A stretch of 64,000 nt of DNA from Asterias rubens. Lineage: Eukaryota. The position numbers and the translations under genes are program-made. The DNA is taken from positions 5,394,001 to 5,458,000 of the forward strand of contig NC_047071.1 of NCBI RefSeq assembly GCF_902459465.1. Direction: 5' to 3'. Shown here one piece after another: positions 7,863-45,641 of the stretch (within the stretch, counting starts at the first letter, position 1; the number at the start of each line of letters is the position of its first letter). The notes under the pieces are model-generated. The model was not told where the DNA came from, ran no database searches, and saw nothing but the letters and a program-made list of their open reading frames with translations.

Positions 7863-7990
7863 ATTTACTTGAATCTTTTCAAAGTCACTTGAAAGTTAGG
7901 AAGCACAAGTACGATCTGAAGCTCTTGAGATCCACACTCGGTGAGATATTCAAGTCAGAATGAATGTCTACAGCAAGCGTGATACATTAT
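7860..7990 (-). other. Putative first exon: 5'UTR ending in the start ATG
   Basis: AATATG|gtaagt at 7862-7854. TATA-like TATAAT near 7990 and an ATTGG box further upstream. The transcription start is approximate. Confidence 0.45.
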
Positions 7991-8032
7991 ATCATGGAGC
8001 AATGATCATATGGTGGTTGTGAAATGGAAGAT

Positions 8033-8145
8033 TAAACCAAAGTTACATGCTCTGATTCGTCGAAATGGGGGACTAAACCAAAGTTACATGCTCTGATTCG
8101 TCGAAATGGGGGACTAAACCAAAGTTACATGCTCTGATTGGTCGA
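8033..8145. repeat. 41-bp tandem repeat (~2.7 copies)
   Basis: TAAACCAAAGTTACATGCTCTGATTCGTCGAAATGGGGGAC starts at 8033, 8074 and 8115. Confidence 0.9.
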
Positions 8146-24650: not shown

Positions 24651-24917
24651 AACAACTTAAAATGACACTCAAAAAGACCCCTCACTGACAACTTTCACAA
24701 GTAAATGGATAAATCTAGGTTTCTAACCAACTCTCTACACATTTCAAAGTTCAAAGTATTACCTTTAGCTTGTTTTTTGGGGGGTATATGCTCAGGAAAA
24801 AGGGGCTTTTTTCAGTCAAAAACAGGGTGCAAAACATTAAAATTGGCAAAGTCATTGGAGGTCAACACGATTATTGACCATTTTCCGGTGGTTTACCTCA
24901 CTGAATTGAACGGCACA

Positions 24918-25697
24918 GGGCTAAAGCCAAAAGTATCGTTTGTGTGACAGGACGGAATTTGACATATACTCTCACCTACAGAAAAAGAATACTTTTTGCA
25001 TGTTTCTTTCTCTCAATTACTGGAGGATTAATTATGATATACATGCGACAGGACGGAAATGTGACAGGACGGAATTTCGTTCACATGGTTTAAATCAACT
25101 ATAACCATTAAAAAAATGGGTCTAATTAAATGTTTTTAATCCAATTGTTATCAAGTGTATAAATAACCATAAAAACAAAACATACAATGGGAAACTGGCT
25201 CAATAATTCTGTCCAGTCGGACTTGTTTTCAGTCCTGTCGCACCTATTTCCGTCCTGTCACTCTAGTTTTTGTCCTGTTATGAACACTACAGATTGCCTT
25301 ATTAAGTTAATTGGAGGAATTAATTGAAAGCAATTATGCTTAAAGTGTCAAACACACTTGTGATTGATAGTTTGGAAGAATTCATACAAATAAATACAAA
25401 ATTAAGCATTTGAATATTAATTAATAGATTAACAAATGCGATAGGACGGAATTGATACCTTTAAATTTACATATTTGCATTAATTATTTTAAGTATTTGG
25501 TTTAGATACATGTGCTCCATGACCAGCTAGTCTATATACAAAAATAACAAAACTGAATAAATCTGTTAATTAAGTTATTGTAGTTTTAATTACCGGTAAT
25601 CATTCAATCCTGTCGCACTCTAAGTGCCTGTTTCTCGTTTAAATCACTTCATAATTAGCATTATAGAGCTCAGGATGACCACTTTTGGCTTTGGTCC
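24918..25697. mobile_element. 780-bp non-autonomous DNA transposon inserted in the left foldback arm
   Basis: 17-bp TIR GGGCTAAAGCCAAAAGT / ACTTTTGGCTTTGGTCC; TSD CACA(G); the empty site is visible in the right arm; internal GACAGGACGGAA subrepeats. Confidence 0.8.
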
Positions 25698-27039
25698 CAC
25701 AGTCAGTCCTTTTGTCCCACAGATTCAACCCGCACATCTGAATAAAGAAGATTTCCGTTCCACAAGTATAAGAATTATTATGATTGGACTAGGGGGAAAA
25801 GGGGCTTTTTTGCTTCCAATCAATCATCGTCTCTTTTCTAAGACATGACCCGATTACCATAATGCAAAGTATTTTTAGAGTCTGGCACTATTATTCTATA
25901 TAATGAAGGTTGAACTAGATCAGACCACGCAGTAATTTCGTCGAAGACGAAGCACACCGGACGGGTGTTGGTTTTGCCCCCTTCAATGTTCGTTTTTCAT
26001 TGATTCAATGGCTCAAAACTAAGTTCAGTGTAGGAATATAGATCTTACAACATAGGGTTTCTGTTATTTTCATAACATTCACTGGATATCGGCAAAATGA
26101 GTCTTTTTTGTTGTCGATAGTAGTCGGCCGTATCATTTTTCTTCGAGGAGTGACTGTTGAGTGTTGTTGTGATAGTCGCTATTGTCGCGTGTTTCCCCGT
26201 CTCGCCCACACATATACATGTGCAATACGTGGATAGGTAAGATTCAATTTAAAGAATTTGTTTGTTTCTTAAACAATAAAAGAATGTTTCTGCCTAGCAT
26301 GACATTACTTTTAGGTAGTAATTTACAAACATGACATGATGGGTCTTGTAAAAAAACATAATCGTGCAATTTTGCATTGCTATTAACTATCAAGCCAACC
26401 AAACCTAATCATTCAATCATCCCAAGCAAACATCTATTAACAAGCAACAGTTAGCAATGCATTTTTGTTTTGTAACTGTGTTAATTAATATTTGCATTTG
26501 TGATTTTCTTAACAGGCTTTTTTTATGGCTGATAAGAAAGGAGTTGACGCAAAAGACAGCAGCATGACTATCGGCAACTCCACATCGGACCAGCAGTGCC
26601 AATCGTAGTTGGGATAACAAAACCCTGTACCAGTCGGCGAAGCCAGAGGGTTAATACGAACAGCAAACAGCAATCTGGTCCAACACGTACAATTTCGACA
26701 GCTAGTCAACAGATTTGCCCCATTTTTACCACCTTCGAAAATAAAGACACAAGCTTGATCCTCAATGTCTTATGCATCAGTTCATCACACTCAAAACATC
26801 ATTGAGGAAATATTTTATAGAAAAGGGACAACAACTTACCAGCTTACCTTATATAGATGTATTTTGTACATGTGATTATTTTGTTTTCAATTATTAGTCA
26901 TTTGTAATTGTGTTCATGTGACTCAGTCGTAATTTTGATTAGAAAGTGTACCAGAATTTTGGGAGACAGCGGCTTGAACTCAGGAACCATTTTTAAAATT
27001 GGCTAAGAGACAATTAGATGAACCAGTGAATATTTTACA

Positions 27040-28356
27040 AATTAACACTACAAAGCACAATTGATGCCCTCTATCTAAACATGGAATTATTTCTTTAAAA
27101 CAATCTCAAGTTCTTAATCGTACAAAATCCTGGTGTCGGACGTGCATTGTGTTCGTACGTCCGACACCAGTACGTCCGACACCTCCAAAATAATTATGTG
27201 AAAGCCTTTTTGAATGCCTTTAAAATATCATACAAAGCTATAAATTGGTACCTGGGGTAACTCTCACCCAAATCACAAAACAAGTGTATTTCATTCCCCA
27301 TTTTCCTACTGGCTGCTAAAAACACAATCATTTTAATCCGCAGAAAATTTTAATTTCCATTTCCAAAACCCACTGGTACTTATAATTAATATAAGAAAAG
27401 CTTGGTTTTTGCAATATATTTGTTAAATTCAGGTACAGGTGGTTACCCCCAAGCAAGGATAGAGCGCTTATTCATTTAGTAAACTGTAGACAATGCTCTA
27501 AAGTTGGTTTTTGAGAGAAAATATCAAAACATTTAACACCAAAATTCTTGGTGACCTTTGACCTTGGCAACAGTTACCCACCAAGAACTTTAAACTTTAA
27601 TTTTTTTTAAACACAAGTCCAATCTACAATATATTTGGACCAAATAATATTTTGCAGACTCATATCTTTCATTGTTAGGCAACATTTTGAAACTTGGGTG
27701 TTTTGCCAGTTTTGGTTGCCACAGCAATGCATAAGGATAGCATGTACATCATGTACAAGTTGCATTACACATGCACATTGTTTCTATTGATCTCAAAACG
27801 TGGTATAGTTTGACAATTAAACCACTTTTTTCAACAAATATTTATTTAATCTGATATACAACACCAAATTGGTAGATGAAATCATTATTTTATAACAAAA
27901 GTGAAAAGTTGAACTGATTGTTACCTATTTTTGAATGCAATTTCGGACAAGTACGTCCGACACTGTGAAATGTACGTCCGACACCAATATATTAAATGCC
28001 ATTCCTTAAAATTCAAATTTAAAAACCAAATGTCTTATGGTAAAGTGTAATGACAGAGGTCTGATGAATCCATAAATAAGAAAAAATTGCATTTAAGTTC
28101 AAACACATCACAGAGTTTGAACTACAAATATTGGTTTTCATAAAAAGGCATTTCTCTGAGTACGTCCGACACCATGGTGTTTTGGGCGAATGGCGTCTAT
28201 ATCCAAAGACATGGATGAATAATTTGTTGTTAAAATAACTTTAGTGACTGCCTTATACCTCTATCCAGAATAAAAATTCCTTTTATTTATACCACTGTAA
28301 TAATACACTCTGTTAAAGTGTCCGAAATGTACGTCCGACCCCGTGGAACTGCCCTG
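27040..28356. mobile_element. Second insertion in the left arm: DNA-transposon remnant with TACGTCCGACACC subrepeats
   Basis: Absent from the right arm. Right end ...GGAACTGCCCTG. Interior at 27550-27900 is similar to 2740-2940 and 3930-4100. Left end not resolved. Confidence 0.55.
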
Positions 28357-31337
28357 CTTCATTTTAGATCATGTTTGTCAGTTGAAATCATTTCAACTGT
28401 TTTAAAATGCAAAAAAAAAAAAAAAACTTGATAAAATGTGTGTGCTATTGTTGGCCACATATGCCATTACATCATTCGTGCAAAGTATTGTTGTTACTTG
28501 TACCACTAAATTTTTTGTCAACTTTTACTATTTATCATCATTCATATCTAAACTAAACCATTATGAACAACTTGGCCTTGGTTTCGTACAACAAATCCCA
28601 TTTCCTCTGTGTGTGTGCGCACAGTGTGGAGATTTGACCTTGTGTACAAAGCACAGACATTCTTTGTAAAACAGGTCAATGGACTGGACCATTTCACACA
28701 ATGGGGGGGGGGGGACTTATGTACACGGTCTTAGTACACAATACAAGATGTTGGAGTTAAACAGTTCAACTAAATGAAGTTTTATTTTATAAGTACATGT
28801 TCTCATGTTTTCTTCAGCACATTAACAAAGGTATGAATACAATAACAACCACTTATTCAATCGTGTGATATATAAATATTACAGGAATGGTTACAGGAAT
28901 GGTTGAAAATAAACTGTTCATGCTTGGTATTGCTGACTCTTCCTCCAAGCTCCAGTTTAGTTTAGATATGAATGATGATAAATAGTAAACGTTGACAAAA
29001 AAATATAGTGGTACAAGTAACAACAATACTTTGCACGAATGAGATGTCATGTAATGGCATATGTGACAAAAAATAGCACAAGAATTGGCATTTTAAAACA
29101 GTTGAAATGATTTCAAAAAAATACTGTATGATCCAGTAACATTAACCGAAAAACATGAATGAAGCACAAAAAGTTAGCTGCTTGTAAAATAATCACTGGT
29201 TCATCTAATGTATCTTAGCCAATTTGAGAAATGGTTCCTGAGTTCAAGCCGTTGTCTCCAAAAGTCTGGTACACTTTCTAATCCAAATTACGACTGAGTC
29301 AAATGAACACAATTACAAATGACTAAATAGTATAATCAAAAACAAATAAATACATGTACAAAATACATGTTTATAAGGTAATCTGGTAAGTTGTTGTCCC
29401 TCTTCTTTAAAATATTTCCTCAATGGTGTTTTCAGTGTTATGAACTGATGCATAAGAAATTGAGGATCAAGCTCGTGTCCTTAAAAATTGTGTCAACATT
29501 TTCGAAGGTGGTAAAAATGGGGCAATTCTGTTAACTAGCTGTCAAAATTGTACGTGTTGGACCAGATTGCCGTTTGCGGTTCGTATTAACCCTCTGGCTT
29601 CGCCGATTGGTACGGGGTTTTGTTATCGCAACTACGGTTGGCACTGCTGGTCCGATGTGAAGTTGCTGATAGTCATGCTGCTGTCTTTTGCGTCGACTCC
29701 TTCTTAGGTGGTCCCTTATCAGCCATCAAAAAAGGCTGTTAAGAAAATTACAAATGCAAAAATAAATTAACACAGTTACAAAACAAAAATGCACATTGCT
29801 AACTTACGTCGACAGGAATGTGCACTGATGATCGAGCCACCATGTTACTCCGAAATGTTGAGGGTTAGCATTAATAGGTCCAAATTAAGTTTAAAGTCAA
29901 ATATACTGTTGTTTTTTAATAGTTGTTTGCTTGGGATGATTGAATGATTAGGTTTGGTTGGCTTGATAGTTAATAGCAATGCAAAATTGCATGATTATGT
30001 TTTTGTACAAGACCCATCATGTCATGTTTGTAAATTACTACTTAAAAGTAATGTCATGCCAGACAGAAACATTTTTTTTTAATTTAAAAAACAAACAAAT
30101 TCTTTAAGTTGAACCTTACCTCTCCACGTATTGCACATGTATATGTGTGGGCGAGACGGGGAAACACGCAACAATAGCGACTATCACAACAACACTCAAC
30201 AGTCACCCCTCGAAGAAAAATGATATGGCCCGACTACTATTGACGACAAAAAAGACTCATTTTGCTGATCCGGTGAATGTTATGAAAATAACAGAAACCC
30301 TATGTTGTAAGATCTATAATTATTCCTACACTGAACTTAGTTTTGAGCCATTGAATCAATGAAAAACGAACATTGAAGGGGGCAAAACTAACAACCGCCC
30401 GGCGTGCTTCGTCTTCGACGAAATGACTGCGTGGTCTGATCTAGTTCCCCGTTCAACCTACATTATACGTGTGTTTACAAGAGATTATATATGGAGCCAG
30501 ACTATAGAAATACTTTGCATTATGGTAATCGGGTCATGTCTTAGAAGAGAGACGTTGCATGATTGGAAGCAAAAAAGCCCCTTTTTCCCCTAGTCCAATC
30601 AGAATGATTCTTATATGAGTGGAACGGAAATCTTATGTACTTTATTCAGAAGTGCGAGTTGAATCTGTGGGACAAAAGGAACGACTGTGCTGTTCAATTC
30701 AGTGAGGCAACCCACCGGAAAATGGTCAATAATCATGTTGACCTCCATTGACTTTGCCGATTTTGAGGTTTTACACCCCGTTTTTGACTGAAAAAAGCCC
30801 CCTTTTTCCAGAGCATAATAAATATCAAAAAATTAACCAAGCTAAAGGTAATACTTTGAACTTTGAAATGCGTAGCGAGTTGGTGAGAAACCTAGGCGTA
30901 CTATTCATTTACTTGCGAAAGTTGTCAGTGAGTGTCATTTTCCTGCGCTGAGCGTAGTTCATCTTTTGACAAAAAGTAATATATAATCATAACAGCAATA
31001 ACTTATTTCAAACTGGTTTGTTCTTTGATATCACATGCCCATGAATAATTTCTTTAGACCTGATTTCAATGGAAATGATCATGACCTGTTAGAATGATTA
31101 TGGGCAATGCGTGAAATTTTATGGGTTCAAAATACCTCATATTTGAACTGAGAACACAGATATGTATGCATAATTATTATATATAATGAATAGAGTAGAT
31201 GGCCTTATTAATTATTATATACAAAAACGTACACATAGCATAACTGTATTTTTTTCTCATATTAAAAAATCGGTTCATTTGCTGACATGGATGGCTTTTT
31301 AATATAAAGTCAATTTATGAGATAGTTCAACAAACAA

Positions 31338-32473
31338 TTATTTATGTGTTGGGTCTGTATAAGGAATGACCAACCGATATGTATTTTTTCGCAGTAGCGC
31401 AGGGGCAATTTTCTGGAAAGAAAGTGCGCACCAGTACCGCGCCAGAGTTTTCCACTTTGCTACTTCGTTGCCGACTGTTTGTTTAACATGTATACCTTGC
31501 ATTGCAGCCACCCTGTCTTCGATGTTAATTACCCCCAGCCCTCCTCTGGAGGGTGGAAGGAACATGGTGGCTCGGTCGACAAACTCGCCTTTATGTCCCC
31601 AGATAAAGGGAAAAATCAAGCGATTGATTCGCTTAACTTCTCCCCTCTGGGGCGGGTCAACTTCAGCTAAATACCACATTTTTGATAAAATGTAAGTGTT
31701 GGCAACTGTGACTCTACCCTTCATGGTAAGATCACATTCATTCCATTCTTTTATGCCGTTCTCAAGTTGTTTTATCTTTGCCTCCCAGTTTTGCTGGTGG
31801 GGCTCTTTGTAACCGAAATTGATCCCTAGAATTTTGGCTGAATTTACCCATGCGATGTCGACCGGGCCATTCCGTTTATCCTTCCACTTGCCGAGGTAGA
31901 CACCGTGAGATTTCTGCTGATTTAGCTTAGCACCGGACGCGCGCCCGTATCTCTCGATCATCTCAAAACTTTTCACAATAGATCTGTCGTCCGACAGGAT
32001 CAGGGTGGTATCATCAGCATACATAGAAATTTTGGCTTCGGTCCCCCCGGGTAATTTGATCCCATGGATTTTTGGATCCGCCCTTAACGCACACCCGAGG
32101 GGTTCCAGTGCTAAGATGTATAGCAGTGGTGACAGGGGGCACCCCTGCCTTACCCCCCGGGAGAGTGGAAAGGGCTCGGATATGTTCCCGTTACAAATCA
32201 CGGAACTTTTAATGTCACTATATAGAATTTTCACCCACTGACGAAAATTAGGGCCGATACCAAACTTCTCCAATACCTGCTGCAGATACCCCCAATCGAC
32301 CCTATCAAACGCTTTTTGCTGATCGAGGGACACGAACGCAGCGCCCATATTCTTCTGGTCAACGTAATCCTGAATATTCCTTAGCAAGTGGGCATTGTCC
32401 AGTATGGTTCTACCCGCCACCGAACAGGTTTGGTCGATATTTATGATTTTGTGTAAAACCTTACGCAGTCTGG
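31338..32473 (-). pseudogene. Tx1 ORF2 3' part: RT core, C-terminally truncated
   Basis: RKVLHKII...LDQQKAFDRVDW, GVRQGCPLSPLLY, YADDTT, KILGINFG. Joins the 5' part in frame once the insertion and one TSD are removed. Confidence 0.9.
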
Positions 32474-35400
32474 TATGGGCGGCCAAAAGGGCCAAAACTA
32501 ACAAATTTATAAACTAAAGGACAAAACAGTAATCGAAGAAAGAAGTTGTTCAACAAACACAACGTCGAAACGTAGGTAACAAAACTCAACAACAATCAAA
32601 GCAAACTGTTTTTAAACAATGAACAATTCCCAAATCAAGCTTTATAGCCCAACAACAATCAAACACTTGTTTTTAACAAGAGGAACTCTGAATCAAACTA
32701 ATAAAACAAAACGCAATCAAATATAAAATAAAAACAAAACAAAGGCAGCCAAACGCTAAAAGAATGAATCCTTAAAAAGAACAAACACAACCAGTACAAA
32801 GTCAAATAGGGACGAATACTAACACAGTAACAATAAAGACAAATCATCAATCGGCTATCGTTGAAAACGAAAATCAAACTAACTATTACAAAATGTTTAG
32901 GGCGGTTGTCAAAGCTACGGACAAAATGCAAACCGTATCAGTCTCCCGAGCATGTAATCAACATTTTACGACAAACTAAGGACTGAATGAAAATCATCGT
33001 TGGTGGCGTATGTACAGTTGTGATTGAGACCCGGCCGAACGTGGGCAATTTACATAAAATGGGCGTGTTTTTGGCCGAAAAATACTCTCGCGCATGCACG
33101 AACTTAGTAAGTGATGACCGCAAGGGACCTTGGGCCACTGGTGGTATGTGGAATGAAAATAGTTGTTGCATGGATGAGAAATAAATGGGGAACACACAAC
33201 CTGCTTTTCTTCTACTATCGCTTCACACAATGGTGTACAAGGCTGGTTGTGATGAACCAGTCTACCTCCTATTTCTTCCTCCATCGCTAACCATGGAGAT
33301 ATAGCATCCATGGTCTACAAAAAAGCAATTATTTTTTAAACTGGACACATTTGGTAATTATTGTCGAAGACCAGTATTTTCACTTGATGTATCCCAACAT
33401 GCATAAAATAACAAACCTGTGAACAAAAAACACATTAATTTTGTTGCATAATTTTGTGTGCTTCCAGATGTATAACTGCTGTTTGTAATTTCATCAAAAA
33501 ACATTTAGGACCACAGCCGTTCATTATGACCGTCAGTCTATTGTGTAACCCTTATAATTAGGAGGAATGACTAAACATCCAGTGAAAAAAGAGGCCGGAG
33601 TTATACAGCCTTGCCTGTTATCTCCTTTTCCAAACAGTGGACTCTAATCTATAATTGAATCTTCGTGCACAGTATATGAAAACATTTTGTGGGTTTTACC
33701 ATGGTTTAACATTGTTAAAACCTACTAGTTCCATGTGATAATTATTATTTAAAAACCGCCAGCCAGTTTGTTGCTGACTGCAGGATTACTGCTCATCCAG
33801 TTTGTTGATTCAACCCTAGCTCTACGATTCAACCTAGGAGGTAGAAATAGTTCAACAAGGATGTCAATATAAAAACACCCTCGAGCTGAAAAAGAAGGGG
33901 GATACATTCCGAGTTTTTTCAGACAAAACACGGGAAAACTTAATGGAGCTTACCCGTATGCATTGGAAATCTTGTTATAGCGTGGCAAGATCCAAGTGAC
34001 GTTAATTTTTTGCGATGTTTTTTTAATTGTTCTTAAAAATTGTCTTTCCATAAATGTTTGCTTTTTCTAAAACTGTTATTGTAATTTTCACTATACTTCT
34101 GTTAATTCATATATTATGTACAACTTCGGTTGGACTTCTTGAACTGTGATTGATGATCTCACAATTCCATTTTGTCACTTTTATCGTGATACATTTTACT
34201 TGCACAAATTTGCGTAGTTTATTGATTTTATGACTATTGCTCTTTTTGATGATTAACGGTAAGTTGTATAATTTCACTTTAACAACTTAAAAATAGGGCA
34301 ATTTCATTCCCCCAGATAAATGTAATGTGAGGAAGAATTCCCAGCAGTATTTGTAAACATCCATATAACAAGTGGCACAAATCATGACAAGTCTCACCCC
34401 CAATTTTACACAAAAAACAAAAGCACTTTCCCAAGCCACTGGGTAAGGATGATTTCCCACTATTTTATCTCTAGAGTAGAATTCTCAAATCGTTCCATTG
34501 TCCTTTCTCTATGGTTGTTCACACTTCAACAGGTGGCCCATATCCTCTGTAAGCCCATGTCCAGTATTAGCCCCCCCTAACATTCCTGACCTCCCACCCT
34601 TACCCCCCCCCCCCCCGTTGAACATTACATCATCTCACTTCTAGAATCTAGGTGTCACCAATCTTATACCATTTCTAAATTTAGAGTTCCCCCACCACCA
34701 AAACCCTATTATAAGCTCTGCCCAACATTCACTCTGGTGGAGAATTAGCATTCAAGAACATTATTTCCTGCGTTACATCGTCACATTAATATTTATTATC
34801 TGCGATGGCATCAAAACACATTTAGTGGTCGTCACACTTGGTCTCGTCATGGTCTCGTGTTATCAGAACTAAACCATTTCCCATGATTTTACCACATCAC
34901 AGCCTTGCAATAGACCATGCTACCTTTGTTTACATGGTGACCTTGTACATTCTAAAGCGTTTCCTGGAGGGGGCATACTACACACAGGCTATGGGAAAAA
35001 TTAAATTTTGTAATTTTCACATAAATTCAAAATTTACAAAAGCAACCTGTACAGTTTTTAAGATGTGCCCCCTTTCTTCATATCAAAAGTTGAGAAAAAT
35101 CAGACAATGCAATCTCCATAAAACATAAGATTTGTTATTTTCTTCAGTTGATCTGTGTACAATCATACTCTATGGTACAATGCGCCTGCAGGAAGTCCAG
35201 ACTCTGTGGCTGTTTTGTAAACATGTGACGACACAGTTCACATCGTCTATACCCGGGGCCCTACAACAATAGTCACAACTGTACATGTACATACGCCACC
35301 AACGATGATTTTCAGCCAGTCCTTAGTTTGTCGTAAATGTTGATTACATGCTCAGGAGACTGATACGGTTTGCATTTTGTCCTTAGCTTTGACAACCGCC

Positions 35401-35828
35401 CTCAACATTTTGTAATAGTTAGTTTGATTTTCGTTTTCAACGATAGCCGATTGATGATTTCTCTTTATTTTTACTGTGTTAGTATTCGTCCCGATTTGAC
35501 GTTTTAGTGTCTGTGTTTGTTTTTTGTAAGGATTCATTCTTTAAGCGTTTGGCTGTTTTTGTTTTGTTTTTATTTTATTTTTGATTGCGTTTTGTTTTAT
35601 TAGTTTGATTCAGAGTACTTCTTGTTAAAAAACAAGTGTTTGATTGTTGTTGCGCTTTAAAGCTTGATTGGGGAATTGTTCATTGTTTGAAAACAATTTT
35701 CTTTGATTGTTGTTGAGTTTTGTTACCTAAGTTTCTACTTGGTGTTTGTTGAACAGTTTCTTTCTTTGATTATTGTTTTGTCCTTTAGTTTATAAATGTA
35801 TTAGTTTTGGCCCTATTGGCCGCCCATA
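32474..35828. mobile_element. 3355-bp DNA transposon with ~550-bp TIRs; termini and TSD fit IS3EU-like
   Basis: Ends TATGGGCGGCC...GGCCGCCCATA; GTCTGG duplicated at 32468-32473 and 35829-35834 (alternatively 8-bp AGTCTGGT); TIRs ~32474-33023 and ~35273-35828; no long internal ORF. Confidence 0.8.
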
Positions 35829-37494
35829 GTCTGGTGGCGAGTATTTTGCTAATTATCTTGTAATCTACATTTAACAATGAGATCGGGCGCCAATTTGTCA
35901 GTTCCTCTCGGCTACCTTTGCCCTTGAAAATTAGGGTTATCAACCCGCCTTTTTGCGAGGCGCTCAACCCCTCCTGTTTGAAAACGGAGCTAAGTACCTC
36001 GCAAATATCTGGCCCAATCTCATTGAAAAACGTTCGGTAAAATTCGGCGGACAAGCCATCCGAACCGGGTGTTTTGCCCGCCTCCATACTAGACAACGCC
36101 TCACTAACTTCGGACAAAGTCACCGGGCCCTCGAGTAAATTTTGTTCCTCGTGGCTCAGCGACTTATCAATGGAGCCCAGAAAGAACTCAATCTCTTGTT
36201 GTTCAACCGGGACGGCCGTGTAAAGATCCCCATAGAAATGACGACAAGTGTCAGTCATTTGAACGGGGTCGTTGATCACACAGCCGTCTCGGCCTTTCAA
36301 ACTCTGCATTCTTTTAGAATCCGGGTCTTTTGAATTGAGCACTTGCACATTGTCCTCGCCCGTAATCTTAGGTGAAAGACCCGGGCGAGGACAGCTACCG
36401 TGTTGTTTTTTGGCCATGTCGTGCATACTAATTTCGGCCAGTTTTAGTTGGGGAAGAAGGTTTTCTTCCCCATTGTCGACCCGGATTTGCAGATGATTGA
36501 GTTCCATCAGGGCCCCCTTATACTCAGAATTACGTTTCCTAGCCGCCTCAGCAGAGAATGAGATAACCGCTCTCTTGATTTGGGTTTTACCCTCGTCCCA
36601 CCACTCTAAAGGATTCTCGTAATCTTGTTTGTGATTTCCCCATTCTTCCCAAACCCCCTTAACCATACCCTTGAAATTTTCTTCCTCCAGAAAGCTGTTA
36701 TTTAGTTTCCAAAAACCCCTCCCTGCATTTTGTATTTGCGTTTGAATTTTGGTTTTGACCAAATCGTGGTCAGACAAGGGGAAAGCGGTTATCTCATTAC
36801 ATGAACCAGCAGACAATTCCCGGGAAAGATAAATTCTATCAATACGGGTCGCTTTGGTGCCGTCACCACTGTGCCAAGTGAAACGTTTTTTTTGTGGATT
36901 TTGTCCACGCCAACCATCTACCAGACCGTGTTGTTTAATGGTGCGGAGGAGTTCAAAACTCCCCCGCGTTCCCTGATGGTTGGCGCTAGTGTTTTTCGAG
37001 TCCAAGCCCGGGTCGGTGATACAATTGAAATCGCCCCCAAGAATCACATGCCTCATGCCTTTTGTGTGCCTCGGGAGGCTTTCTTTGAAAAATTTCTGTC
37101 TTTCAGCCGGGTCATTGGGGGCATAACAATTGATCACTCTAACCCGGGTCTTGGAATTCGGCACAGTAATTGTGACAGAGACCAAACGACCCGCATTGTC
37201 CCGCAAATAGTCCGCTGGTCTCCACGAATGTCTTTTGGAAAACAAGATGGCTACCCCACAACTAGAATTTGTCCCGAAAGACCAAAACCCTTTGCCGCCA
37301 AACTCTCTCTCCCATCCCCTGGTCTCGTAGAGGCCAGAAGCGTGAGTCTCCTGCAACAGTAAAACATCAGCGTTTTCACTGTTGCAGGAGGCGAGGGTCT
37401 GACGGCGTTTAATACAATCTCTAAGGCCGTTTACATTTATACTACATACATGAAAAGAGCACATCAGAAAAATTAAAATGCGTAACAAATCCAT
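35829..37494 (-). pseudogene. Tx1 ORF2 5' part: APE endonuclease plus start of RT
   Basis: SINVNGL, LLQETH, NCYAPN, GGDFNC, RIDRIY, SDHDLV; KTPGSDGLSAEFY; WRPISLLNVDYKIISKILATRL, then broken by an insertion. Confidence 0.9.
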
Positions 37495-37508
37495 TGTAAA
37501 GTTTAAAT

Positions 37509-38606
37509 TCAAGCAGACTGTTCATTGTTCATGTTCTGACCTTTCTTGTGCTGTTTTTTGTTTCTGCGTTTTACCTCTGTGTACCCTTGGGAAGGGAGAC
37601 TCTCATCCAGTGATGATGATTGAGGTGAGCTACTGTTCTTTTTTGTCGAAGTGTTGGAAACTATTGACATCTCCGAGACTTCAGAGTCAAACAGCCTGGC
37701 CGCCATGTCCTCAGCTAGTTGGGCGTCGATATCTGGTGTGGGGTTGTTGGGTTTTCTCTCCTTTGGTTTTACTTCGGGTTTTGAATCGTTTTCTTCGGTC
37801 GGGTTTCCGCGTCCTCTCTTCGCGATCTTTTTTCTCCGTGGTTTGGGTTGTTCCGTTTCTGTGGTGGATTTTGTAGTGGGCGGCGGGGGGAACGTCATGG
37901 TTGCCTTTCTGTCGGTAATCATCTCCTCTTCATCGTCTGAGGATTCGCTCAGTCGTGGGTGGCCTCTTGTTCTGTTTGCGAAGGAGGTTGGGCACTGGGT
38001 GGAAATGTGTCCCTCCTGATGGCATGCTCGGCAAATCGGTGGTGAGGGGCACTCCGCCGCCCGATGTCCCGCCTCCCCGCAGTTGTGACATTTAAAGTTC
38101 GGACAGTCAGCAGCCTTGTGCCCGGGACCTCCACAACGCCTGCAGGTTTCCACTTGCCCGTTGTATTTTACAACCAACCTGTAGGGTCCAACCTGAAGGT
38201 AGGATGGAATTGGCCGGTCCATCTCCATTTTCACATGTCTGTTCCCATTTTCCCAAAGAGGGTGTTGCTGCCAATGTCCTCGACGTACGTTTATCACTTT
38301 CCCGTATGGCGAAAGAGCGGTGGTAATCGGCTGGTCTCCCATCTCACACGGTGCATACAGGAGCGTCACGAACGTGATGGGTCGTCCTGCTCCAGCCGTG
38401 TGTATGGCGTTCTCTCCGATACGAAGACTCTTTTTCTTCAGACTCTCACTGGCTTGGTCGCTTTTCAGGGTGACCACCCAGGTCTTTTCCCCTGTTTGCT
38501 GCAAACACTTCACCTCCTTGCCTGCCTCCTGCTCCATCAAGTTGCATACCTCCTGGTACGACGCTCTCTTGTCTAGCGACAGGTTTACGCTTTTCTCTCG
38601 ATTCAT
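37509..38606 (-). CDS. Tx1 ORF1p (RRM-like region plus 3 CCHC zinc knuckles)
   Basis: 365 aa; CRRCGGPGHKAADC, CHNCGEAGHRAAEC, CRACHQEGHISTQC; low-complexity basic C-terminus. Confidence 0.9.
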   Translation of the reverse strand: MNREKSVNLSLDKRASYQEVCNLMEQEAGKEVKCLQQTGEKTWVVTLKSDQASESLKKKSLRIGENAIHTAGAGRPITFVTLLYAPCEMGDQPITTALSPYGKVINVRRGHWQQHPLWENGNRHVKMEMDRPIPSYLQVGPYRLVVKYNGQVETCRRCGGPGHKAADCPNFKCHNCGEAGHRAAECPSPPICRACHQEGHISTQCPTSFANRTRGHPRLSESSDDEEEMITDRKATMTFPPPPTTKSTTETEQPKPRRKKIAKRGRGNPTEENDSKPEVKPKERKPNNPTPDIDAQLAEDMAARLFDSEVSEMSIVSNTSTKKNSSSPQSSSLDESLPSQGYTEVKRRNKKQHKKGQNMNNEQSA

Positions 38607-38670
38607 AGTGATTAATTATTGTAGGTAGGATATATCTCGAACTTCCTAAGAATATAGGGGCTCAGACCAA

Positions 38671-38699
38671 TGATCTTAGCCAAAAGGCCGAGAAGCGAT
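38671..38699 (-). ncRNA. U2: U2 snRNA 5' fragment (nt 1-29) fused to the Tx1 5' end
   Basis: Minus strand reads ATCGCTTCTCGGCCTTTTGGCTAAGATCA, the conserved U2 5' end. The branch-point pairing region (AGTGTAGTA) and the rest of U2 were not found. Confidence 0.9.
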
Positions 38700-39557
38700 A
38701 CTCACCACAGGTTTCTCAAGAATAACCCACCTTTCGACATGGCACGAATCACAAGACATGCTGGGTGTCACAAGAGGGCGGTGTGACTTTTTTGACAACT
38801 TTTCACACACGGCGAACATTCGTTGTATCGAAAATAGAGCATCTCTGACCGCACACAAAGCAAGAGCTTGCACCAAAACTCAAATACATCCACGTGTAAA
38901 CGTATGCAACACGCAAGTGCATGTTATTCTAAGTTTATGTTTACGTTATACAGGGTTGCCTGGTTGGGCTCGTCCCGCGCGTTTGTACACGCGGGTTAAG
39001 ACAATGGACATTACAAGCGCGCGGAACACAACAATGCGTCACATTGCAGTACGCAAAACATTGTACATAGAAACAGCGTGCTGTGTGCATTGTCACATGC
39101 ACCGCATGCAGTACGTTAACACACACACACGGGCTACATTCGGCTTGCGACATCGTGATGGAAGGAATGATGTGTGATGATTATACACACATGAAGAGAT
39201 AACAGAAATTAAAGTAGAATACTTTATCTTTTAGTATTTCATCTCCCGGTATCGGCGTTAGGTTGTGCCAAACAATTAGTGTGTAAATATTTCGGAGAAC
39301 TTTTGTTCTATGTCTATTGATACAGCTTTGAACTTTTTTGTTCTAAACCGTTGCTCTACTACAGTTAGCATCGCAACGAAAATAAAGCTTTGGTCTGACT
39401 TATGTGTGGTTTATAGGGTACCAAACAACTTGTTGGATGATTGGTTACGCACGGAAAACAAATAGTATTCAATGAATTCAATATATATGTGTGGGGGGGG
39501 GGGGGTTGTCTTACAAACGCAGTTCATGTTTAGAATCTCTCTTTGGATTGATGTGGT

Positions 39558-39572
39558 GGCTCCGTAAGAGCC
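39558..39572 (-). terminator. Aberrant histone 3' stem-loop of H2A
   Basis: GGCTCTTACGGAGCC (15 nt versus canonical 16-nt GGCTCTTTTCAGAGCC), followed by ACCA and a CAAAGAGAGA downstream element. Confidence 0.75.
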
Positions 39573-39603
39573 GTTTGGTTTATCAGTGTAGCAAGAGCTG
39601 AGT

Positions 39604-40200
<597 letters not shown>

Positions 40201-40300
40201 GGGGAAGGTAGGGATAATTACTGCGGCGGTCCCCCCACCGTCAACACCCCTCTGAAAACAAGATAAGATTCCGAGAAAAAAAAACCTAACCCCAACAACG

Positions 40301-40340
<40 letters not shown>

Positions 40341-40959
40341 AAACAAAGCAAAAGCAAATATTTACAGAAACTGAAAAACATCATGTTTGTTTGTTTTTGC
40401 GTGCACATGTTTTTGTTGATTTTTCAAAATAAAACTATTACCAAATTCATAATTTCAAGTTAACTCTGGCGTATAGAGTCGCTGTTGTTGTTGTGTTGTA
40501 TGTTATTAAAGTAATACGGTGTCATGAACAAGGCACTTACTCAATGTACGTCTTTCTTTCTTTCTTCAAGTCCAATCTTGTGAACCCTCACTCGACTCGG
40601 TGACACATTTGAGCGTTGTCTTTTATAACTGACTGTAAAAGTAGAATAACAATCAACGAGAAAGATGTTTAGTGATCGCTAAAAATTATAGTGGACAAAG
40701 TTATCAAGATGATTTGAACTTCGTAAACAATGTTGTTGAGTTGTTCTACGGAGATATATAAAGAAGGCAGAAATATTTTGAATAACCCTTTAATATAATA
40801 TAGCATTATTGTAAACCCTGTTGATTTTAATTAATATTATTAAATGGGGAGGGTTGGTGTTACGGTGGCCACTTAATTCACGCATGTTTTGAATCTCTCT
40901 TTGGGAAATGTGTTGGCTCTGAAAAGAGCCGTTTGGATTGTGCTTGACGCCGGACCTGC

Positions 40960-41328
40960 TTATTTTGAAGTTGTGTACTTGGTGACCGCCTTGGTGCCCT
41001 CGCTGACAGCGTGTTTGGCCAGCTCACCGGGGAGAAGGAGACGGACTGCAGTCTGGACCTCTCGGCTGGAGATGGTTGATTTCTTGTTGTAGTGGGCCAA
41101 TCTAGAAGACTCGGCGGCAATGCGCTCGAAAATGTCGTTGACGAAGCTGTTCATAATCGACATGGCCTTGCTGGAAATGCCCGTGTCTGGATGAACCTGC
41201 TTCATGACCTTGTAGATGTAAATGCCGTAGCTCTCCTTGCGGCGACGACGTCTCTTCTTGTCTGTCCGGATTGGCCCCTTGGTGTTACCGGCTTTCTTCT
41301 GTCCCTTTCCACTTGCTTTGGGAGGCAT
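40960..41328 (-). CDS. H2B: Histone H2B, full-length ORF
   Basis: 122 aa; canonical stem-loop at 40915-40930 with CAAAGAGA element; promoter has GGATCC and TATAAA. The N-tail resembles sea-star gonadal H2B as recalled (not database-checked). Confidence 0.95.
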
Positions 41329-41863
41329 GACTATAGAGTGCTGTGTTGCTGAGTTGGTAGAATAAATCAGACTGATGACTGGTACACCGGAGAAGGCTTA
41401 GCTTTATACTGCGAGTCGGGGATCCGGCGGCCATTAGGGCATTGTTAGCATTCGCGCGCCTCGCTGTGAGCAGTGAAGCGGTCCACCAGAAAAGTTGCGT
41501 GTCTGCAAGGATGGGTGTCTGAATAACGGGCAGGCAACCATTGGAGGATGATTGGTTACGCACGGAAAACAAATAGTATTCAATGAATTCAATATATATG
41601 TGTGGGGGGGGGGGTTGTCTTACAAACGCAGTTCATGTTTAGAATCTCTCTTTGGATTGATGTGGTGGCTCCGTAAGAGCCGTTTGGTTTATCAGTGTAG
41701 CAAGAGCTGAGTTTAAGAGCTTGACTTGGCGGTTTTCTTTGAATTTAACTTCTGACTGCCATCGTAGCGGGCGCTATACAACATTCGTATAAGTAGGCAC
41801 GGTCCTCTATTATACCGAAAGTTATGTTTACACTGCAAGGTGTATACATTAGTTCGTCGTGTG

Positions 41864-41903
41864 CCCGGCAAAAGGGCGTAAGGCCTTACGCCCTTTTGCC
41901 GGG
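41864..41903. repeat. Perfect 40-bp spacerless palindrome within a small subrepeat-bearing element (~41855-42169)
   Basis: CCCGGCAAAAGGGCGTAAGG|CCTTACGCCCTTTTGCCGGG. Confidence 0.9.
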
Positions 41904-42185
41904 AACATAAAGTAGTTCGTCCCAGTAACAAAAGGACGTAAGCAACAAAATGGCTCCTGACATGAAAAATATGTAATTTTTGTTTGTTCTTTTGCTAGAA
42001 TTACCCTGAAGACATGTTTCCCCATTCCCCATGCAGAATTCATTCTAGAATGACTTTTGCATGGCAACAAATTTACCAAACTTTCCCGCTCATAATTCTT
42101 GAAACACAAATTTTAACATAAATTGCTTACGTCCTTCTGCCGGGAACTTTCCCTTACGTCCTTTTGCCGCGGAGCTCTGGAATCG

Positions 42186-42242
42186 CTTTCGTGGGGCTTT
42201 TCCCCCGGTGCTCTTGCGTGCTGTCTGCTTGGTACGAGCCAT
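42186..42242 (-). pseudogene. H3: Histone H3 N-terminal fragment (M + residues 1-18), fused to H3 residues 83-88
   Basis: ATG GCT CGT ACC AAG CAG...CCA CGA AAG = MARTKQTARKSTGGKAPRK, then CGATTCCAGAGCTCCGCGG (RFQSSA) at 42167-42185. Confidence 0.9.
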
Positions 42243-42269
42243 TATCTTCGCTTACTGTTTACGATGTTG

Positions 42270-42573
42270 TGGTGACACCGCTGAGCAACTTGTTCAACTC
42301 TTCATCGTTTCGGATAGCGAGCTGTAGATGACGGGGGTTGATTCTTGATTTCTTGTTGTCTCGAGCAGTATTACCAGTCAGTTCCAGTATTTCTGCCGTG
42401 AGGTACTCCATGACTGCCGCCAAGTAGACAGGGGCGCCAGCACCAACGCGCTGAGCGTAGTTGCCCTTCCTCAAGAAGCGGTGTACTCTACCAACGGGAA
42501 ATTGAAGTCCGGCCCTGGCGGATCGACTCTTTGCCTTGCTTCTGGCCTTACCGCTCTTTCCGCGTCCAGACAT
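42270..42573 (-). pseudogene. H2A: 3'-truncated H2A copy
   Basis: Matches the 39604 gene up to LLSGVT except LTGNTA versus LAGNAA, then joins the H3 5' flank; no stem-loop. Confidence 0.9.
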
Positions 42574-43459
42574 GACTGAATTGATATACTGAGCAAAGAG
42601 ACTGAAAGAACTGCTGGGTGCTTTGAATCTGTGTGAATGACTGCAGAGACTGCCAGTGGTGTACTTATGGCGTTAGGGTGGATCCCCAATGCACCAATCA
42701 GGTTTCTCCTCGCATGGACGCGCCCGGGTTCAGCGGAGCATTCTGGGCGGGGGTGGACCACCAGCGGCGGGCGGGGGCGGCACGCAGTTCGAGGGGAAGG
42801 TAGGGATAATTACTGCGGCGGTCCCCCCACCGTCAACACCCCTCTGAAAACAAGATAAGATTCCGAGAAAAAAAACCTAACCCCAACAACGACAACAACA
42901 ACAACAACAACAAAAACAAAGCAAAAGCAAATATTTACAGAAACTGAAAAACATCATGTTTGTTTGTTTGTTTTTGCGTGCACATGTTTTTGTTGATTTT
43001 TCAAAATAAAACTATTATCAAATTCATAATTTCAAGTTAACTCTGGCGTATAGAGTCGCTGTTGTTGTTGTGTTGTATGTTATTAAAGTAATACGGTGTC
43101 ATGAACAAGGCACTTACTCAATGTACGTCTTTCTTTCTTTCTTCAAGTCCAATCTTGTGAACCCTCACTCGACTCGGTGACACATTTGAGCGTTGTCTTT
43201 TATAACTGACTGTAAAAGTAGAATAACAATCAACGAGAAAGATGTTTAGTGATCGCTAAAAATTATAGTGGACAAAGTTATCAAGATGATTTGAACTTCG
43301 TAAACAATGTTGTTGAGTTGTTCTACGGAGATATATAAAGAAGGCAGAAATATTTTGAATAACCCTTTAATATAATATAGCATTATTGTAAACCCTGTTG
43401 ATTTTAATTAATATTATTAAATGGGGAGGGTTGGTGTTACGGTGGCCACTTAATTCACG

Positions 43460-43601
43460 GTACTTGGTGACCGCCTTGGTGCCCTCGCTGACAGCGTGTT
43501 TGGCCAGCTCACCGGGGAGAAGGAGACGGACTGCAGTCTGGACCTCTCGGCTGGAGATGGTTGATTTCTTGTTGTAGTGGGCCAATCTAGAAGACTCGGC
43601 G
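43460..43601 (-). pseudogene. H2B: Internal H2B fragment (AESSRL...AVTKY) behind an H2A promoter
   Basis: Matches 40975-41116; C-terminus and stem-loop deleted; joined to the H2A start by a short templated insertion. Confidence 0.85.
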
Positions 43602-44403
43602 ACTAGAAGACTAGAAGACATGACTGAATTGATATACTGAGCAAAGAGACTGAAAGAACTGCTGGGTGCTTTGAATCTGTGTGAATGACTGCAGAGACTG
43701 CCAGTGGTGTACTTATGGCGTTAGGGTGGATCCCCAATGCACCAATCAGGTTTCTCCTCGCATGGACGCGCCCGGGTTCAGCGGAGCATTCTGGGCGGGG
43801 GTGGACCACCAGCGGCGGGCGGGGGCGGCACGCAGTTCGAGGGGAAGGTAGGGATAATTACTGCGGCGGTCCCCCCACCGTCAACACCCCTCTGAAAACA
43901 AGATAAGATTCCGAGAAAAAAAACCTAACCCCAACAACGACAACAACAACAACAACAACAACAAAAACAAAGCAAAAGCAAATATTTACAGAAACTGAAA
44001 AACATCATGTTTGTTTGTTTTTGCGTGCACATGTTTTTGTTGATTTTTCAAAATAAAACTATTACCAAATTCATAATTTCAAGTTAACTCTGGCGTATAG
44101 AGTCGCTGTTGTTGTTGTGTTGTATGTTATTAAAGTAATACGGTGTCATGAACAAGGCACTTACTCAATGTACGCCTTTCTTTCTTTCTTCAAGTCCAAT
44201 CTTGTGAACCCTCACTCGACGACACATTTGAGCGTTGTTTTTTATAACTGACTGTAAAAGTAGAATAACAATCAACGAGAAAGATGTTTAGTGATCGCTA
44301 AAAATTATAGTGGACAAGTTATCAAGATGATTTGAACTTCGTAAACAATGTTGTTGAGTTGTTCTACGGAGATATATAAAGAAGGCAGAAATATTTTGAA
44401 TAA

Positions 44404-44697
<294 letters not shown>

Positions 44698-45566
44698 TGA
44701 TGACTGGTACACCGGAGAAGGCTTAGCTTTATACTGCGAGTCGGGGATCCGGCGGCCATTAGGGCATTGTTAGCATTCGCGCGCCTCGCTGTGAGCAGTG
44801 AAGCGGTCCACCAGAAAAGTTGCGTGTCTGCAAGGATGGGTGTCTGAATAATGGGCAGGCAACCATTGGAAAGGAGTTTTATACTCTGGTTAGAACTAAA
44901 ACACGAATATAGTGTAACCCAAAACAAGTATCCAAAAATAATAATGAGAGAAACTTATCAAAAAAAACAAAAACAAAATCTGCAATGGCCCGAGCATGCA
45001 TAGTACGTTAATTTTGAAGAAAACGATACCATTAAATTATGGAGTAAAACCAAAGCAAGAGATTGACCTAACCAACCCGACTAGACTGATAGAACGACCG
45101 ACCCAATAAAAGAATGGCGGTGCTGCGTAAAGATAAAAAACAACTGTTTTGTTACAGCTAGCAGGTTTTGGGGTATTGTTTTTTTCGTTCATGCTGTTTT
45201 GAATTTAACTTCTGACTGCCATCGTAGCGGGCGCTATACAACATTCGTATAAGTAGGCACGGTCCTCTATTATACCGAAAGTTATGTTTACACTGCAAGG
45301 TGTATACATTAGTTTGTCAAATTTCTAAGGTTCTTGTTTGTTTGTTGCTTGTTTGTTTATTTATTTATTTGTTTGTTTGTTTGTTTGTTTGTTTGTTTGT
45401 TTGTCTATTGGTTCGTTTATTGGTTTGTTTTTGTTTTGTTGAAGGATGGAGTGTGGAAGAGGAAAAATTGGAAGAAATAACGAATACACGGACGTGATTA
45501 ACATCTCTGTTAAGAAGTGGTGGCTCTGAAAAGAGCCGTTGTGTTTTGAGAAAGGAACGAATCCTC

Positions 45567-45641
45567 TCAGGCTCGTTCGCCACGAATTCGGCGGGCGAGT
45601 TGGATGTCCTTGGGCATGATGGTGACCCGCTTGGCGTGGAT
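45567..45641 (-). pseudogene. H3: Histone H3 C-terminal fragment (I112-A135, stop) with canonical stem-loop at 45522-45537
   Basis: IHAKRVTIMPKDIQLARRIRGERA*; joined through GATAC to the H1-array spacer. Confidence 0.9.

What the first reader, a model, noticed from the sequence alone, without database searches (positions are those of the whole stretch)
38607..39180. Tx1 retrotransposon fused to U2 snRNA nt 1-29: a U2-targeting or U2-headed element
Seen: an exact 29-nt U2 5' end lies 64 nt upstream of the ORF1 ATG, same strand, with a CpG-rich region further upstream. Established: Keno (Tx1 clade) and Utopia insert specifically into U2 genes; as recalled, the site is ~37-38 nt from the 5' end, not 29. 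Inference: either a new U2 target site in an echinoderm lineage that lets the element use the U2 promoter, or a U2 head carried as the element's own 5' end (U2 stem I included).
Basis: partly seen in the sequence, partly recalled or inferred. Interest (0 to 1): 0.72.

Follow-up and report, generated by a model that had tools for sequence, protein, structure and literature searches.

The report
Starfish jumping gene with U2 head
A full-length but dead LINE-type jumping gene in the common starfish carries the first 30 letters of U2 spliceosomal RNA on its front end. The U2 piece most likely came in with this one copy and is not part of a U2 gene that was hit, which makes it a new example of a quirk already described in crocodilian Tx1 elements.

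Summary
On the minus strand, window 38699->38670 equals nt 1-30 of this genome's own U2, which has T at nt 30, so the match is 30 nt and not 29. It lies 63 nt upstream of the ORF1 start of an APE+RT non-LTR retrotransposon (38699->30955). A 3.35-kb DNA transposon interrupts the RT.

The head is not part of a resident U2 gene:
- The upstream flank is unique DNA at the edge of a histone cluster.
- That flank lacks the two promoter boxes shared by all four U2 genes and a U5 gene; 38% of random segments score as well.
- No other U2 piece lies in the 64 kb.
- Neither of the family's two independent 3' junctions is U2. One abuts a truncated repeat; the other lies between RAG2-like and RAG1-like genes.
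- No other full-length copy exists in the 417.6-Mb genome.

The best reading is that the head arrived with this retrocopy. Template switching of the RT onto U2 snRNA is most likely. Transcription from a lost master copy inside a U2 gene is the main rival. Crocodilian Tx1-Mar families with U1/U2 heads are the published precedent.

A sister ORF1-only family has one copy inserted at U5 nt 42 inside a U5 array, so the clade does touch snRNA genes.

The parts
38670..38699 (-). U2 snRNA head: exact copy of nt 1-30 of this genome's U2, including stem-loop I, at the extreme 5' end of the element
   Evidence: Only this place and the four true U2 genes match in the genome.
38607..38669 (-). 63-nt 5' UTR of the retrotransposon, single copy in the genome
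37509..38606 (-). ORF1, 365 aa, intact, with three CCHC zinc knuckles by eye (Pfam scores two)
   Evidence: A 100%-identical protein cluster occurs on about 21 public contigs.
35828..37521 (-). ORF2 first part: APE endonuclease plus the start of the RT, open up to the transposon insertion
   Evidence: Pfam Exo_endo_phos E 1e-14. Aligns to aa 7-546 of roughly 1150-aa relatives.
32475..35827 (.). Foreign 3353-bp non-autonomous DNA transposon inserted into the RT. It has terminal inverted repeats of about 125 bp and an 8-bp target duplication ACCAGACT (32467-32474 and 35828-35835). It kills this copy.
   Evidence: The RT reading frame continues exactly across the insertion.
31341..32474 (-). ORF2 second part: the rest of the RT up to the stop codon at 31341-31343. 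There is no zf-RVT domain.
   Evidence: Pfam RVT_1 E 1e-29. Aligns to aa 545-903 of relatives; their last 250 aa or so have no counterpart anywhere in the window.
30955..31340 (-). 3' UTR of 386 nt with no poly(A). The element ends at 30955.
   Evidence: A second, independent 5'-truncated copy (C12, with a duplicate on C8) is 96-98% identical and diverges from the window at exactly this base.
38705..39312 (.). Upstream flank: DNA unique in the genome between the head and the end of a histone-cluster repeat (39313 onward; H2A gene at 39604-39981). CpG is not depleted and there is no snRNA-type promoter.
28384..30954 (-). Downstream flank: a copy of a mid-copy repeat ('TE-X') that lacks the first 43 nt or so of its terminus. 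An inverted partner lies at 24671-27040. No target-site duplication with the upstream flank.

Best explanation
The 30-nt U2 piece is a head that entered the locus as part of the retrocopy. It is not the stump of a U2 gene that the element hit. The element is an APE-type, Tx1-like LINE.

The proposed sequence of events is as follows. A full-length RNA of the element was reverse-transcribed at a nick at the edge of a histone cluster, next to or inside a copy of another repeat. When the RT reached the 5' end of its own RNA it jumped onto a U2 snRNA at about nt 30. It then copied U2 to its capped 5' end (nt 1). The finished cDNA was joined to the upstream DNA with loss of some target sequence, so no target duplication was made. 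A DNA transposon later landed in the RT and killed the copy.

Shown here: the anatomy, the absence of a U2 promoter and of any U2 remainder, the non-U2 3' junctions, and single-copy status. Inferred: the template switch itself and the order of events.
For: - The head starts exactly at U2 nt 1 and is 100% identical to the local U2. That is expected if a mature or nascent U2 RNA was copied to its end.
- The upstream flank is unique DNA adjoining a histone repeat. It has no similarity to the four U2 promoters. On a two-box promoter model built from the U2 and U5 genes it scores -1.3, and 38% of random window segments do as well or better; the true promoters score 21-31.
- No further U2 piece lies in 64 kb.
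- The true 3' end (30955) is defined by two independent insertions, and both have non-U2 flanks.
- All four U2 genes of the genome are intact, and there is no second full-length copy.
- Eight other related LINE families in the genome show no snRNA head in their 5' regions.
- The sister family B, which can land in U5, carries no U5 head on its full-length off-target copy.
- Precedent: in the Keno-related Tx1-Mar lineage of crocodilians, U1 and U2 sequences were repeatedly added to the 5' ends of Tx1 and SINEU elements. The truncation points vary and junction microhomology occurs, and the author attributes this to template switching (PMC4494074).
Against: - With one full-length copy, a template switch cannot be told apart from a head inherited from a master transcript.
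- In the classic L1 chimeras, as I recall them, the snRNA part is usually full length and the whole is flanked by target duplications. Here only 30 nt are present and no duplication is found.
- The 5' UTR is only 63 nt, which would suit an element that relies on an outside promoter.
- A sister family has a copy inside a U5 gene. An ORF1 relic also lies 0.5 kb from a U2 gene. The clade therefore has real dealings with snRNA genes.
- Copies in other samples could not be inspected.
Confidence: 0.5

Rival explanations
1. The head is inherited from a U2-resident master copy. On this reading the family normally sits in a U2 gene about 30 nt from the start and is transcribed from the U2 promoter, so its RNA begins with U2 nt 1-30. 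The window copy would then be an off-target retrocopy of that RNA, and the master has been lost or is not in this assembly.
For: - The head begins at the U2 transcription start.
- The 5' UTR is very short at 63 nt.
- Relatives do land in snRNA genes: a family B copy joins U5 at nt 42 inside a U5 tandem array, and Tx1 families with U2 and U5 targets are on record (PMC4494074 Fig. 3 legend).
- Keno and Utopia cut U2 at nt 38/39 with variable 5' junctions (PMC4640811). A 5' junction at nt 30 could therefore be a small target deletion.
- Co-transcription with the target is the rule for R2-type elements (PMC4494074).
Against: - No copy of the family lies in or next to any of the four U2 genes, and all four are intact.
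- Both independent 3' junctions of the family are non-U2, so there is no sign of U2 specificity in this family.
- Sister family B carries no U5 head on its full-length off-target copy.
Confidence: 0.28
2. In-situ Keno-like insertion. The element hit a U2 gene or U2 pseudogene that lay at this spot. The 30 nt are what is left of the target, and the rest of U2 was lost by later rearrangement.
For: - Keno-type elements exist, and the RLE-type U2-targeting Utopia occurs in a starfish, Patiria (PMC4640811).
- The 5' junction lies only 8 nt from the known Keno site.
- Three bases just upstream of the head equal those of one true U2 gene. With four genes to match, this has about a 6% chance.
- There is no target duplication, and the downstream flank is a truncated repeat. 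Target sequence was therefore lost, and the lost part could have included a U2 remainder.
Against: - There is no snRNA promoter upstream.
- The flank continues into histone-cluster DNA, and the histone-repeat stretches compared here show no U2 gene beside them.
- The element's 3' end is intact at 30955 and abuts non-U2 DNA. A 3' U2 remainder would have had to be removed exactly at the junction.
- The element is young (open ORFs, head 100% identical), so a decayed promoter is unlikely.
Confidence: 0.12
3. Chance match or assembly chimera.
For: None beyond the fact that only one copy exists.
Against: - A 30/30 match beginning exactly at nt 1 is expected about 1e-13 times in the window.
- Words across the stretch are held by 17 runs from 9 studies.
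- An identical ORF1 occurs on many public contigs.
Confidence: 0.02

Closest known systems
Tx1-Mar families with snRNA heads (Tx1-11_Crp with a U2 head; Tx1-2_Crp, Tx1-2B_Crp and Tx1-4_AMi with U1 heads) and SINEU, crocodilians (Kojima 2015, PMC4494074)
   Same: - An APE-type LINE carries a short U2-derived sequence at its extreme 5' end.
- The head is tens of nt long. SINEU-3's first U2 block is 32 bp.
- The head is attributed to 5' addition by template switching.
- Those elements tend to land in other transposons; here the 3' flank is another repeat.
   Different: - There the heads are family-level features, seen in consensus sequences with many old copies. Here there is one young copy in an echinoderm.
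- Clade membership was not verified.
- No SINE partner with the same head was found.
Keno (Tx1 clade, U2-specific) and Utopia (RLE type, U2-specific)
   Same: - A LINE is physically joined to U2 sequence near the branch-point-binding region.
- Keno has the same ORF1 plus APE+RT layout.
- Utopia is known from echinoderms, including a starfish.
   Different: - Their defining feature is a 3' flank starting at U2 nt 39 inside real U2 genes.
- Here the 3' flanks are non-U2 in both independent insertions, the upstream flank is not a U2 promoter, and the junction is at nt 30.
U6/L1-type chimeric retrocopies of mammals (Buzdin 2002 and Garcia-Perez 2007, as cited in PMC4494074)
   Same: An snRNA 5' part is fused in the same orientation to LINE sequence, which is explained by an RT template switch during target-primed reverse transcription.
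   Different: From my own recollection of that literature (the passages read here do not say it):
- There the snRNA part is usually full length.
- The LINE part is 5'-truncated.
- Target duplications flank the whole.
Here only 30 nt of U2 are joined to a full-length LINE, without a duplication.
U5-targeting Tx1 families (listed in PMC4494074, Fig. 3 legend)
   Same: Sister family B in this genome has a copy whose 3' end joins U5 at nt 42 (loop I) inside a U5 tandem array.
   Different: - Only one of three independent family B copies is in U5.
- Family B has ORF1 only.
- This concerns the sister family and not the window element.

Membership tests
Keno (U2-specific Tx1-clade LINE) | 3' end of the element followed by U2 from nt 39, with a precise 3' junction | tested here: not met
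   The window 3' end at 30955 abuts a truncated repeat. The only other independent insertion abuts RAG-like intergenic DNA. No U2 piece was found.
Keno (U2-specific Tx1-clade LINE) | Sits inside a real U2 gene, so the upstream flank is a U2 promoter | tested here: not met
   No similarity to the four U2 upstream regions. The two-box promoter model scores -1.3, and 38% of random segments do as well.
Keno (U2-specific Tx1-clade LINE) | ORF1 plus ORF2 with an APE endonuclease and an RT | tested here: met
   Pfam zf-CCHC, Exo_endo_phos and RVT_1.
Keno / Tx1 clade | RT groups with Keno or Tx1 in a phylogeny | not testable with these tools
   No named Tx1 or Keno reference sequences could be brought in. 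The best public relatives are unnamed. The nearest long relatives are APE+RVT_1+zf-RVT proteins of about 1150 aa, one of them from lancelet.
Tx1/L1-group ORF2 architecture | C-terminal zinc-binding domain (zf-RVT, PF13966) after the RT | tested here: inconclusive
   Relatives carry it. The window ORF2 stops at the equivalent of about aa 903 of 1155, and no remnant lies in the window. The stop codon lies before a 3' UTR that a second insertion confirms, so the loss looks native to the family.
snRNA-headed Tx1 (Tx1-Mar type) | snRNA-derived sequence at the extreme 5' end of the LINE, in the same orientation | tested here: met
   U2 nt 1-30 directly precede the 63-nt 5' UTR.
snRNA-headed Tx1 (Tx1-Mar type) | Head shared by the copies of the family (present in the consensus) | tested here: inconclusive
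   Only one full-length copy exists in the genome. Contigs from other samples could not be read.
Template-switch chimeric retrocopy (U6/L1 type) | Target-site duplication flanking the whole chimera | tested here: not met
   The sequences flanking the head and the 3' end at 30955 share nothing. The downstream repeat lacks its first 43 nt or so, which points to a target deletion.
Template-switch chimeric retrocopy (U6/L1 type) | The snRNA part starts at nt 1 of the snRNA | tested here: met

The most novel reading that the evidence does not exclude
Sea stars may harbour a lineage of Tx1-like LINEs that lives on spliceosomal snRNA genes, with U2 for this family and U5 loop I for its ORF1-only sister. 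On this reading the U2 head marks a U2 landing site at nt 30/31, distinct from the Keno/Utopia site at nt 38/39. Master copies there would be driven by the U2 promoter, and off-target copies such as this one would carry the co-transcribed head.
Probability: 0.2. Interest if true: 0.55.

Novelty: new member of a known kind. Interest (0 to 1): 0.38.

Why it matters
The copy is young, with open reading frames and a head that is still identical to U2. It shows in an echinoderm the same 5' capture of U2 sequence that gave rise to U1- and U2-headed Tx1 and SINEU families in crocodilians. The habit may therefore be an old property of this kind of reverse transcriptase and not a reptile oddity.

Together with the sister family's insertion in U5 loop I, it gives a concrete place to test how snRNA-associated LINEs are transcribed and how they choose targets.

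It does not reveal a new mechanism, and this copy is dead.

Tried and rejected
- **Read evidence.** No read evidence on RNA starts, empty alleles or other flanks was obtained.
- **Public contigs.** The roughly 21 public contigs with the identical or 93%-identical ORF1 could not be read.
- **Genome letters.** The nearest RT relatives in the genome (39-40% identity, for example on C33, C15 and C8) could not be inspected for snRNA flanks.
- **Metagenome scans.**
  - The scan with ORF1 alone found nothing.
  - The scan with an ORF1 alignment found one 38% relative, L081, with no snRNA head.
- **Naming the clade.** Best hits and the protein atlas gave only unnamed APE/RT clusters.
- **C12 and C8 3'-UTR copies as two independent site-specific insertions.** Rejected. 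They lie in paralogous RAG1-like/RAG2-like loci and share 1.2 kb of downstream DNA, so they are one insertion that was later duplicated.
- **Loss of the element's 3' end.** Considered because ORF2 lacks zf-RVT. Set aside because the stop codon precedes a 3' UTR that a second insertion confirms, and the two copies diverge at the same base.
- **A shifted pair of promoter-like motifs upstream of the head.** Rejected after the PWM control.
- **The C4 and C6 U5-linked copies as independent events.** Rejected. The two 9.9-kb loci are 96% identical, so this is a segmental duplication.
- **An 11-nt match to U2 nt 20-30 in every H1 repeat.** This is at chance level and multiplied by the tandem array.

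Full report
**What is there**

Everything lies on the minus strand. Rfam's U2 model aligns its first 29 positions to window 38699->38671 (30.8 bits). The genome (G000, 417.6 Mb, 150 contigs) has four full-length U2 genes, three on C8 and one on C10. Their nt 30 is T, so BLAST with the local U2 gives 30/30 identity to nt 1-30 at 38699->38670. The head therefore spans the whole of stem-loop I. By my own numbering of the local U2 sequence printed, it stops just before the branch-point-binding box.

After the head the element runs as follows:
- 63 nt of 5' UTR.
- ORF1 (38606->37509, 365 aa, three CCHC knuckles by eye).
- ORF2 with an APE endonuclease and the start of the RT (37521->35828).
- A foreign 3353-bp DNA transposon at 32475-35827, with inverted ends of about 125 bp and an 8-bp duplication ACCAGACT.
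- The rest of the RT up to a stop at 31341.
- A 386-nt 3' UTR ending at 30955.

These parts rest. The RT frame continues exactly across the transposon, so the copy was intact until that hit. The earlier notes of the scan name the genome as the common starfish.

**Where the element ends**

The 3' UTR (31305->30955) recurs at 96% identity on C12. There it is preceded by a 34-bp inverted piece that is contiguous in element coordinates, which has the look of twin priming. The last 64 bp recur on C8.

The two places share 1.2 kb of downstream DNA. The C12 place encodes a RAG1-like protein (Pfam RAG1, E 6e-73) next to a Kelch+PHD, RAG2-like ORF. I read them as paralogous gene loci carrying one old insertion.

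That insertion and the window copy diverge at the same base. I therefore take 30955 as the true 3' end.

In the window the next base belongs to a mid-copy repeat that lacks the first 43 nt or so of its own terminus. The two flanks of the insertion share no target-site duplication. ORF2 lacks the C-terminal zf-RVT domain of its relatives of about 1150 aa. Because the stop codon precedes a confirmed 3' UTR, I read this as native to the family.

**Is the head part of a U2 gene?**

It is not, as far as the sequence shows.
- The upstream flank (38705-39312) is unique in the genome. It runs into a histone-cluster repeat at 39313, and an H2A gene lies at 39604-39981.
- The flank does not align with any of the four U2 upstream regions.
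- The four U2 genes and a U5 gene share two boxes, one near -58 (CAACCATG-like) and one near -28 (ACTACCnnnGG-like).
- A position-weight model of the pair scores the true promoters at 21-31. These scores are by construction, since the model was built from them. It scores the window flank at -1.3, and 38% of random window segments reach that value.
- No other U2 fragment lies in the 64 kb.
- All four U2 genes are intact, and none has this family beside it.

**Is it a family feature?**

That cannot be shown here.
- The 5' part is single copy.
- The next-best RT in the genome is only 39-40% identical.
- The only other insertion of the family is the 5'-truncated one described above.
- Thirteen loci of other ORF1 relatives, among them eight loci of more distant LINE families, show no partial snRNA head near ORF1. 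One search did find full-length U5 genes upstream of ORF1 in two of these loci; these are described under 'Relatives and snRNA genes'.

**Relatives and snRNA genes**

ORF1 relatives at 45-48% identity form an ORF1-only family, which I call family B. It has a 115-nt 5' UTR, a 360-aa ORF1 and a 340-nt 3' UTR. Its copies are 97-98% alike.

One copy sits in the U5 tandem array on C6, and a 96% segmental duplicate lies on C4.
- Its 3' end joins U5 exactly at nt 42, in loop I.
- Its 5' end lies in the spacer, 319 nt upstream of where the next U5 should start. That amounts to a target deletion of about 360 bp.

Two further copies, on C7 and C14, are not in U5. The full-length copy on C7 has no U5 head.

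U5 genes make up about 3 kb of 417 Mb. One hit in three independent copies is therefore not chance.

A third, decayed ORF1 relic lies 0.5 kb from a true U2 gene, but it is not in the gene.

**Literature**

- Keno (Tx1 clade) and Utopia (RLE type) share one U2 site. Their 3' flank starts at U2 nt 39, and the 5' boundaries vary. Utopia occurs in sea urchins and in the starfish Patiria (PMC4640811).
- Kojima 2015 (PMC4494074) reports several relevant points.
  - Tx1-Mar families, which cluster with Keno, carry U1 or U2 heads. Tx1-11_Crp has a U2 head.
  - U1 and U2 pieces were added to 5' ends many times, with variable truncation points and junction microhomology. The author ascribes this to template switching.
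  - The paper's tree legend lists Tx1 families with U2, U5 and 5S targets.

snRNA-headed and snRNA-targeting Tx1 elements are therefore a known kind.

**Reading**

The head came in with the retrocopy.

I favour a template switch onto U2 snRNA at the end of reverse transcription (0.5).
- It needs no lost master copy.
- It matches the published behaviour of the nearest described elements.
- It fits the absence of U2 at any junction of the family.

The main rival is a head inherited from a master copy transcribed from a U2 promoter (0.28). The short UTR and the clade's dealings with snRNA genes keep it alive.

An in-situ hit on a U2 gene or pseudogene (0.12) would need the promoter to be absent and the 3' U2 part to have been removed exactly at an intact element end.

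**Limits**

I did not send those letters to any search tool afterwards and worked beside them.
- Clade placement by tree was not possible.
- Several small runs (99-152 million letters) hold 94-98% of the words of the stretch. That hints at more copies or expression in other samples. This is the first thing to look at next.

Noticed in passing
L079 (G000:C6:17137500-17147400) 6557-8095 minus strand; duplicate in L080 (C4:15007500-15017400): An ORF1-only retroelement (family B) is inserted in the U5 snRNA tandem array. Its 3' end joins U5 at nt 42 (loop I). Its 5' end lies 319 nt upstream of the expected U5 start. The whole 9.9-kb locus is duplicated at 96% identity between C6 and C4.
   Followed up: yes
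L015 (C7:963618-967220) 951-2497 and L012 (C14:5736902-5740549) 1479-2931: Two further young copies of family B (97-98% identity) lie at non-U5 sites. They have no snRNA head and no clear target duplication. No matching ORF2 exists in the genome other than the window element's.
   Followed up: partly
window 32475-35827: A 3.35-kb non-autonomous DNA transposon with inverted ends of about 125 bp and an 8-bp duplication (ACCAGACT). It also contains a high-copy MITE-like piece at 33377-33423.
   Followed up: partly
L054 (G000:C12:11105386-11109786) 336-3849; paralogues at C8:17069128 and C8:17166306: A RAG2-like ORF (Kelch+PHD) and a RAG1-like ORF (Pfam RAG1, E 6e-73) lie tail to tail. A 384-bp fragment of the window element's 3' UTR, with a 34-bp inverted 5' piece, sits between them.
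   Followed up: partly
L001-L004 and L079, from -70 to -15 upstream of the U2 and U5 starts: Starfish U2 and U5 genes share two upstream boxes, one near -58 (CAACCATG-like) and one near -28 (ACTACCnnnGG-like). The U2 genes otherwise fall into two unrelated promoter types.
   Followed up: partly
L078 (G000:C8:11212000-11221999) 7224-8108: A decayed ORF1 relic of a third related family ends about 0.5 kb from the 3' end of a true U2 gene, on the opposite strand. Its 3' terminal motif resembles family B's.
   Followed up: partly
window 24671-27040 and 29182-30958: Two copies of a mid-copy repeat lie in inverted orientation with their termini facing outward. Both have small deletions near the terminus. 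This may be one element with very long inverted ends.
   Followed up: no
L081 (JACSEG010015155.1) 1-141: A contig from another organism holds a 38% ORF1 relative. Just upstream of its 5' UTR lies a 3'-end motif like that of family B, so the elements appear to be arranged head to tail.
   Followed up: no
window 39313-45600: The histone-cluster repeat ends at 39313. A 98% paralogue of 39313-40952 lies at C11:5480589 with a different flank. The H2A, H2B and H3 pieces and the H1 array follow, as noted earlier in the scan.
   Followed up: partly
runs X5, X8, X9, X16: Runs of only 99-152 million letters hold 94-98% of the sampled words of 37509-38800. That is more than single-copy DNA at such depth should give, so the cause may be expression or higher copy number in those samples.
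   Followed up: no
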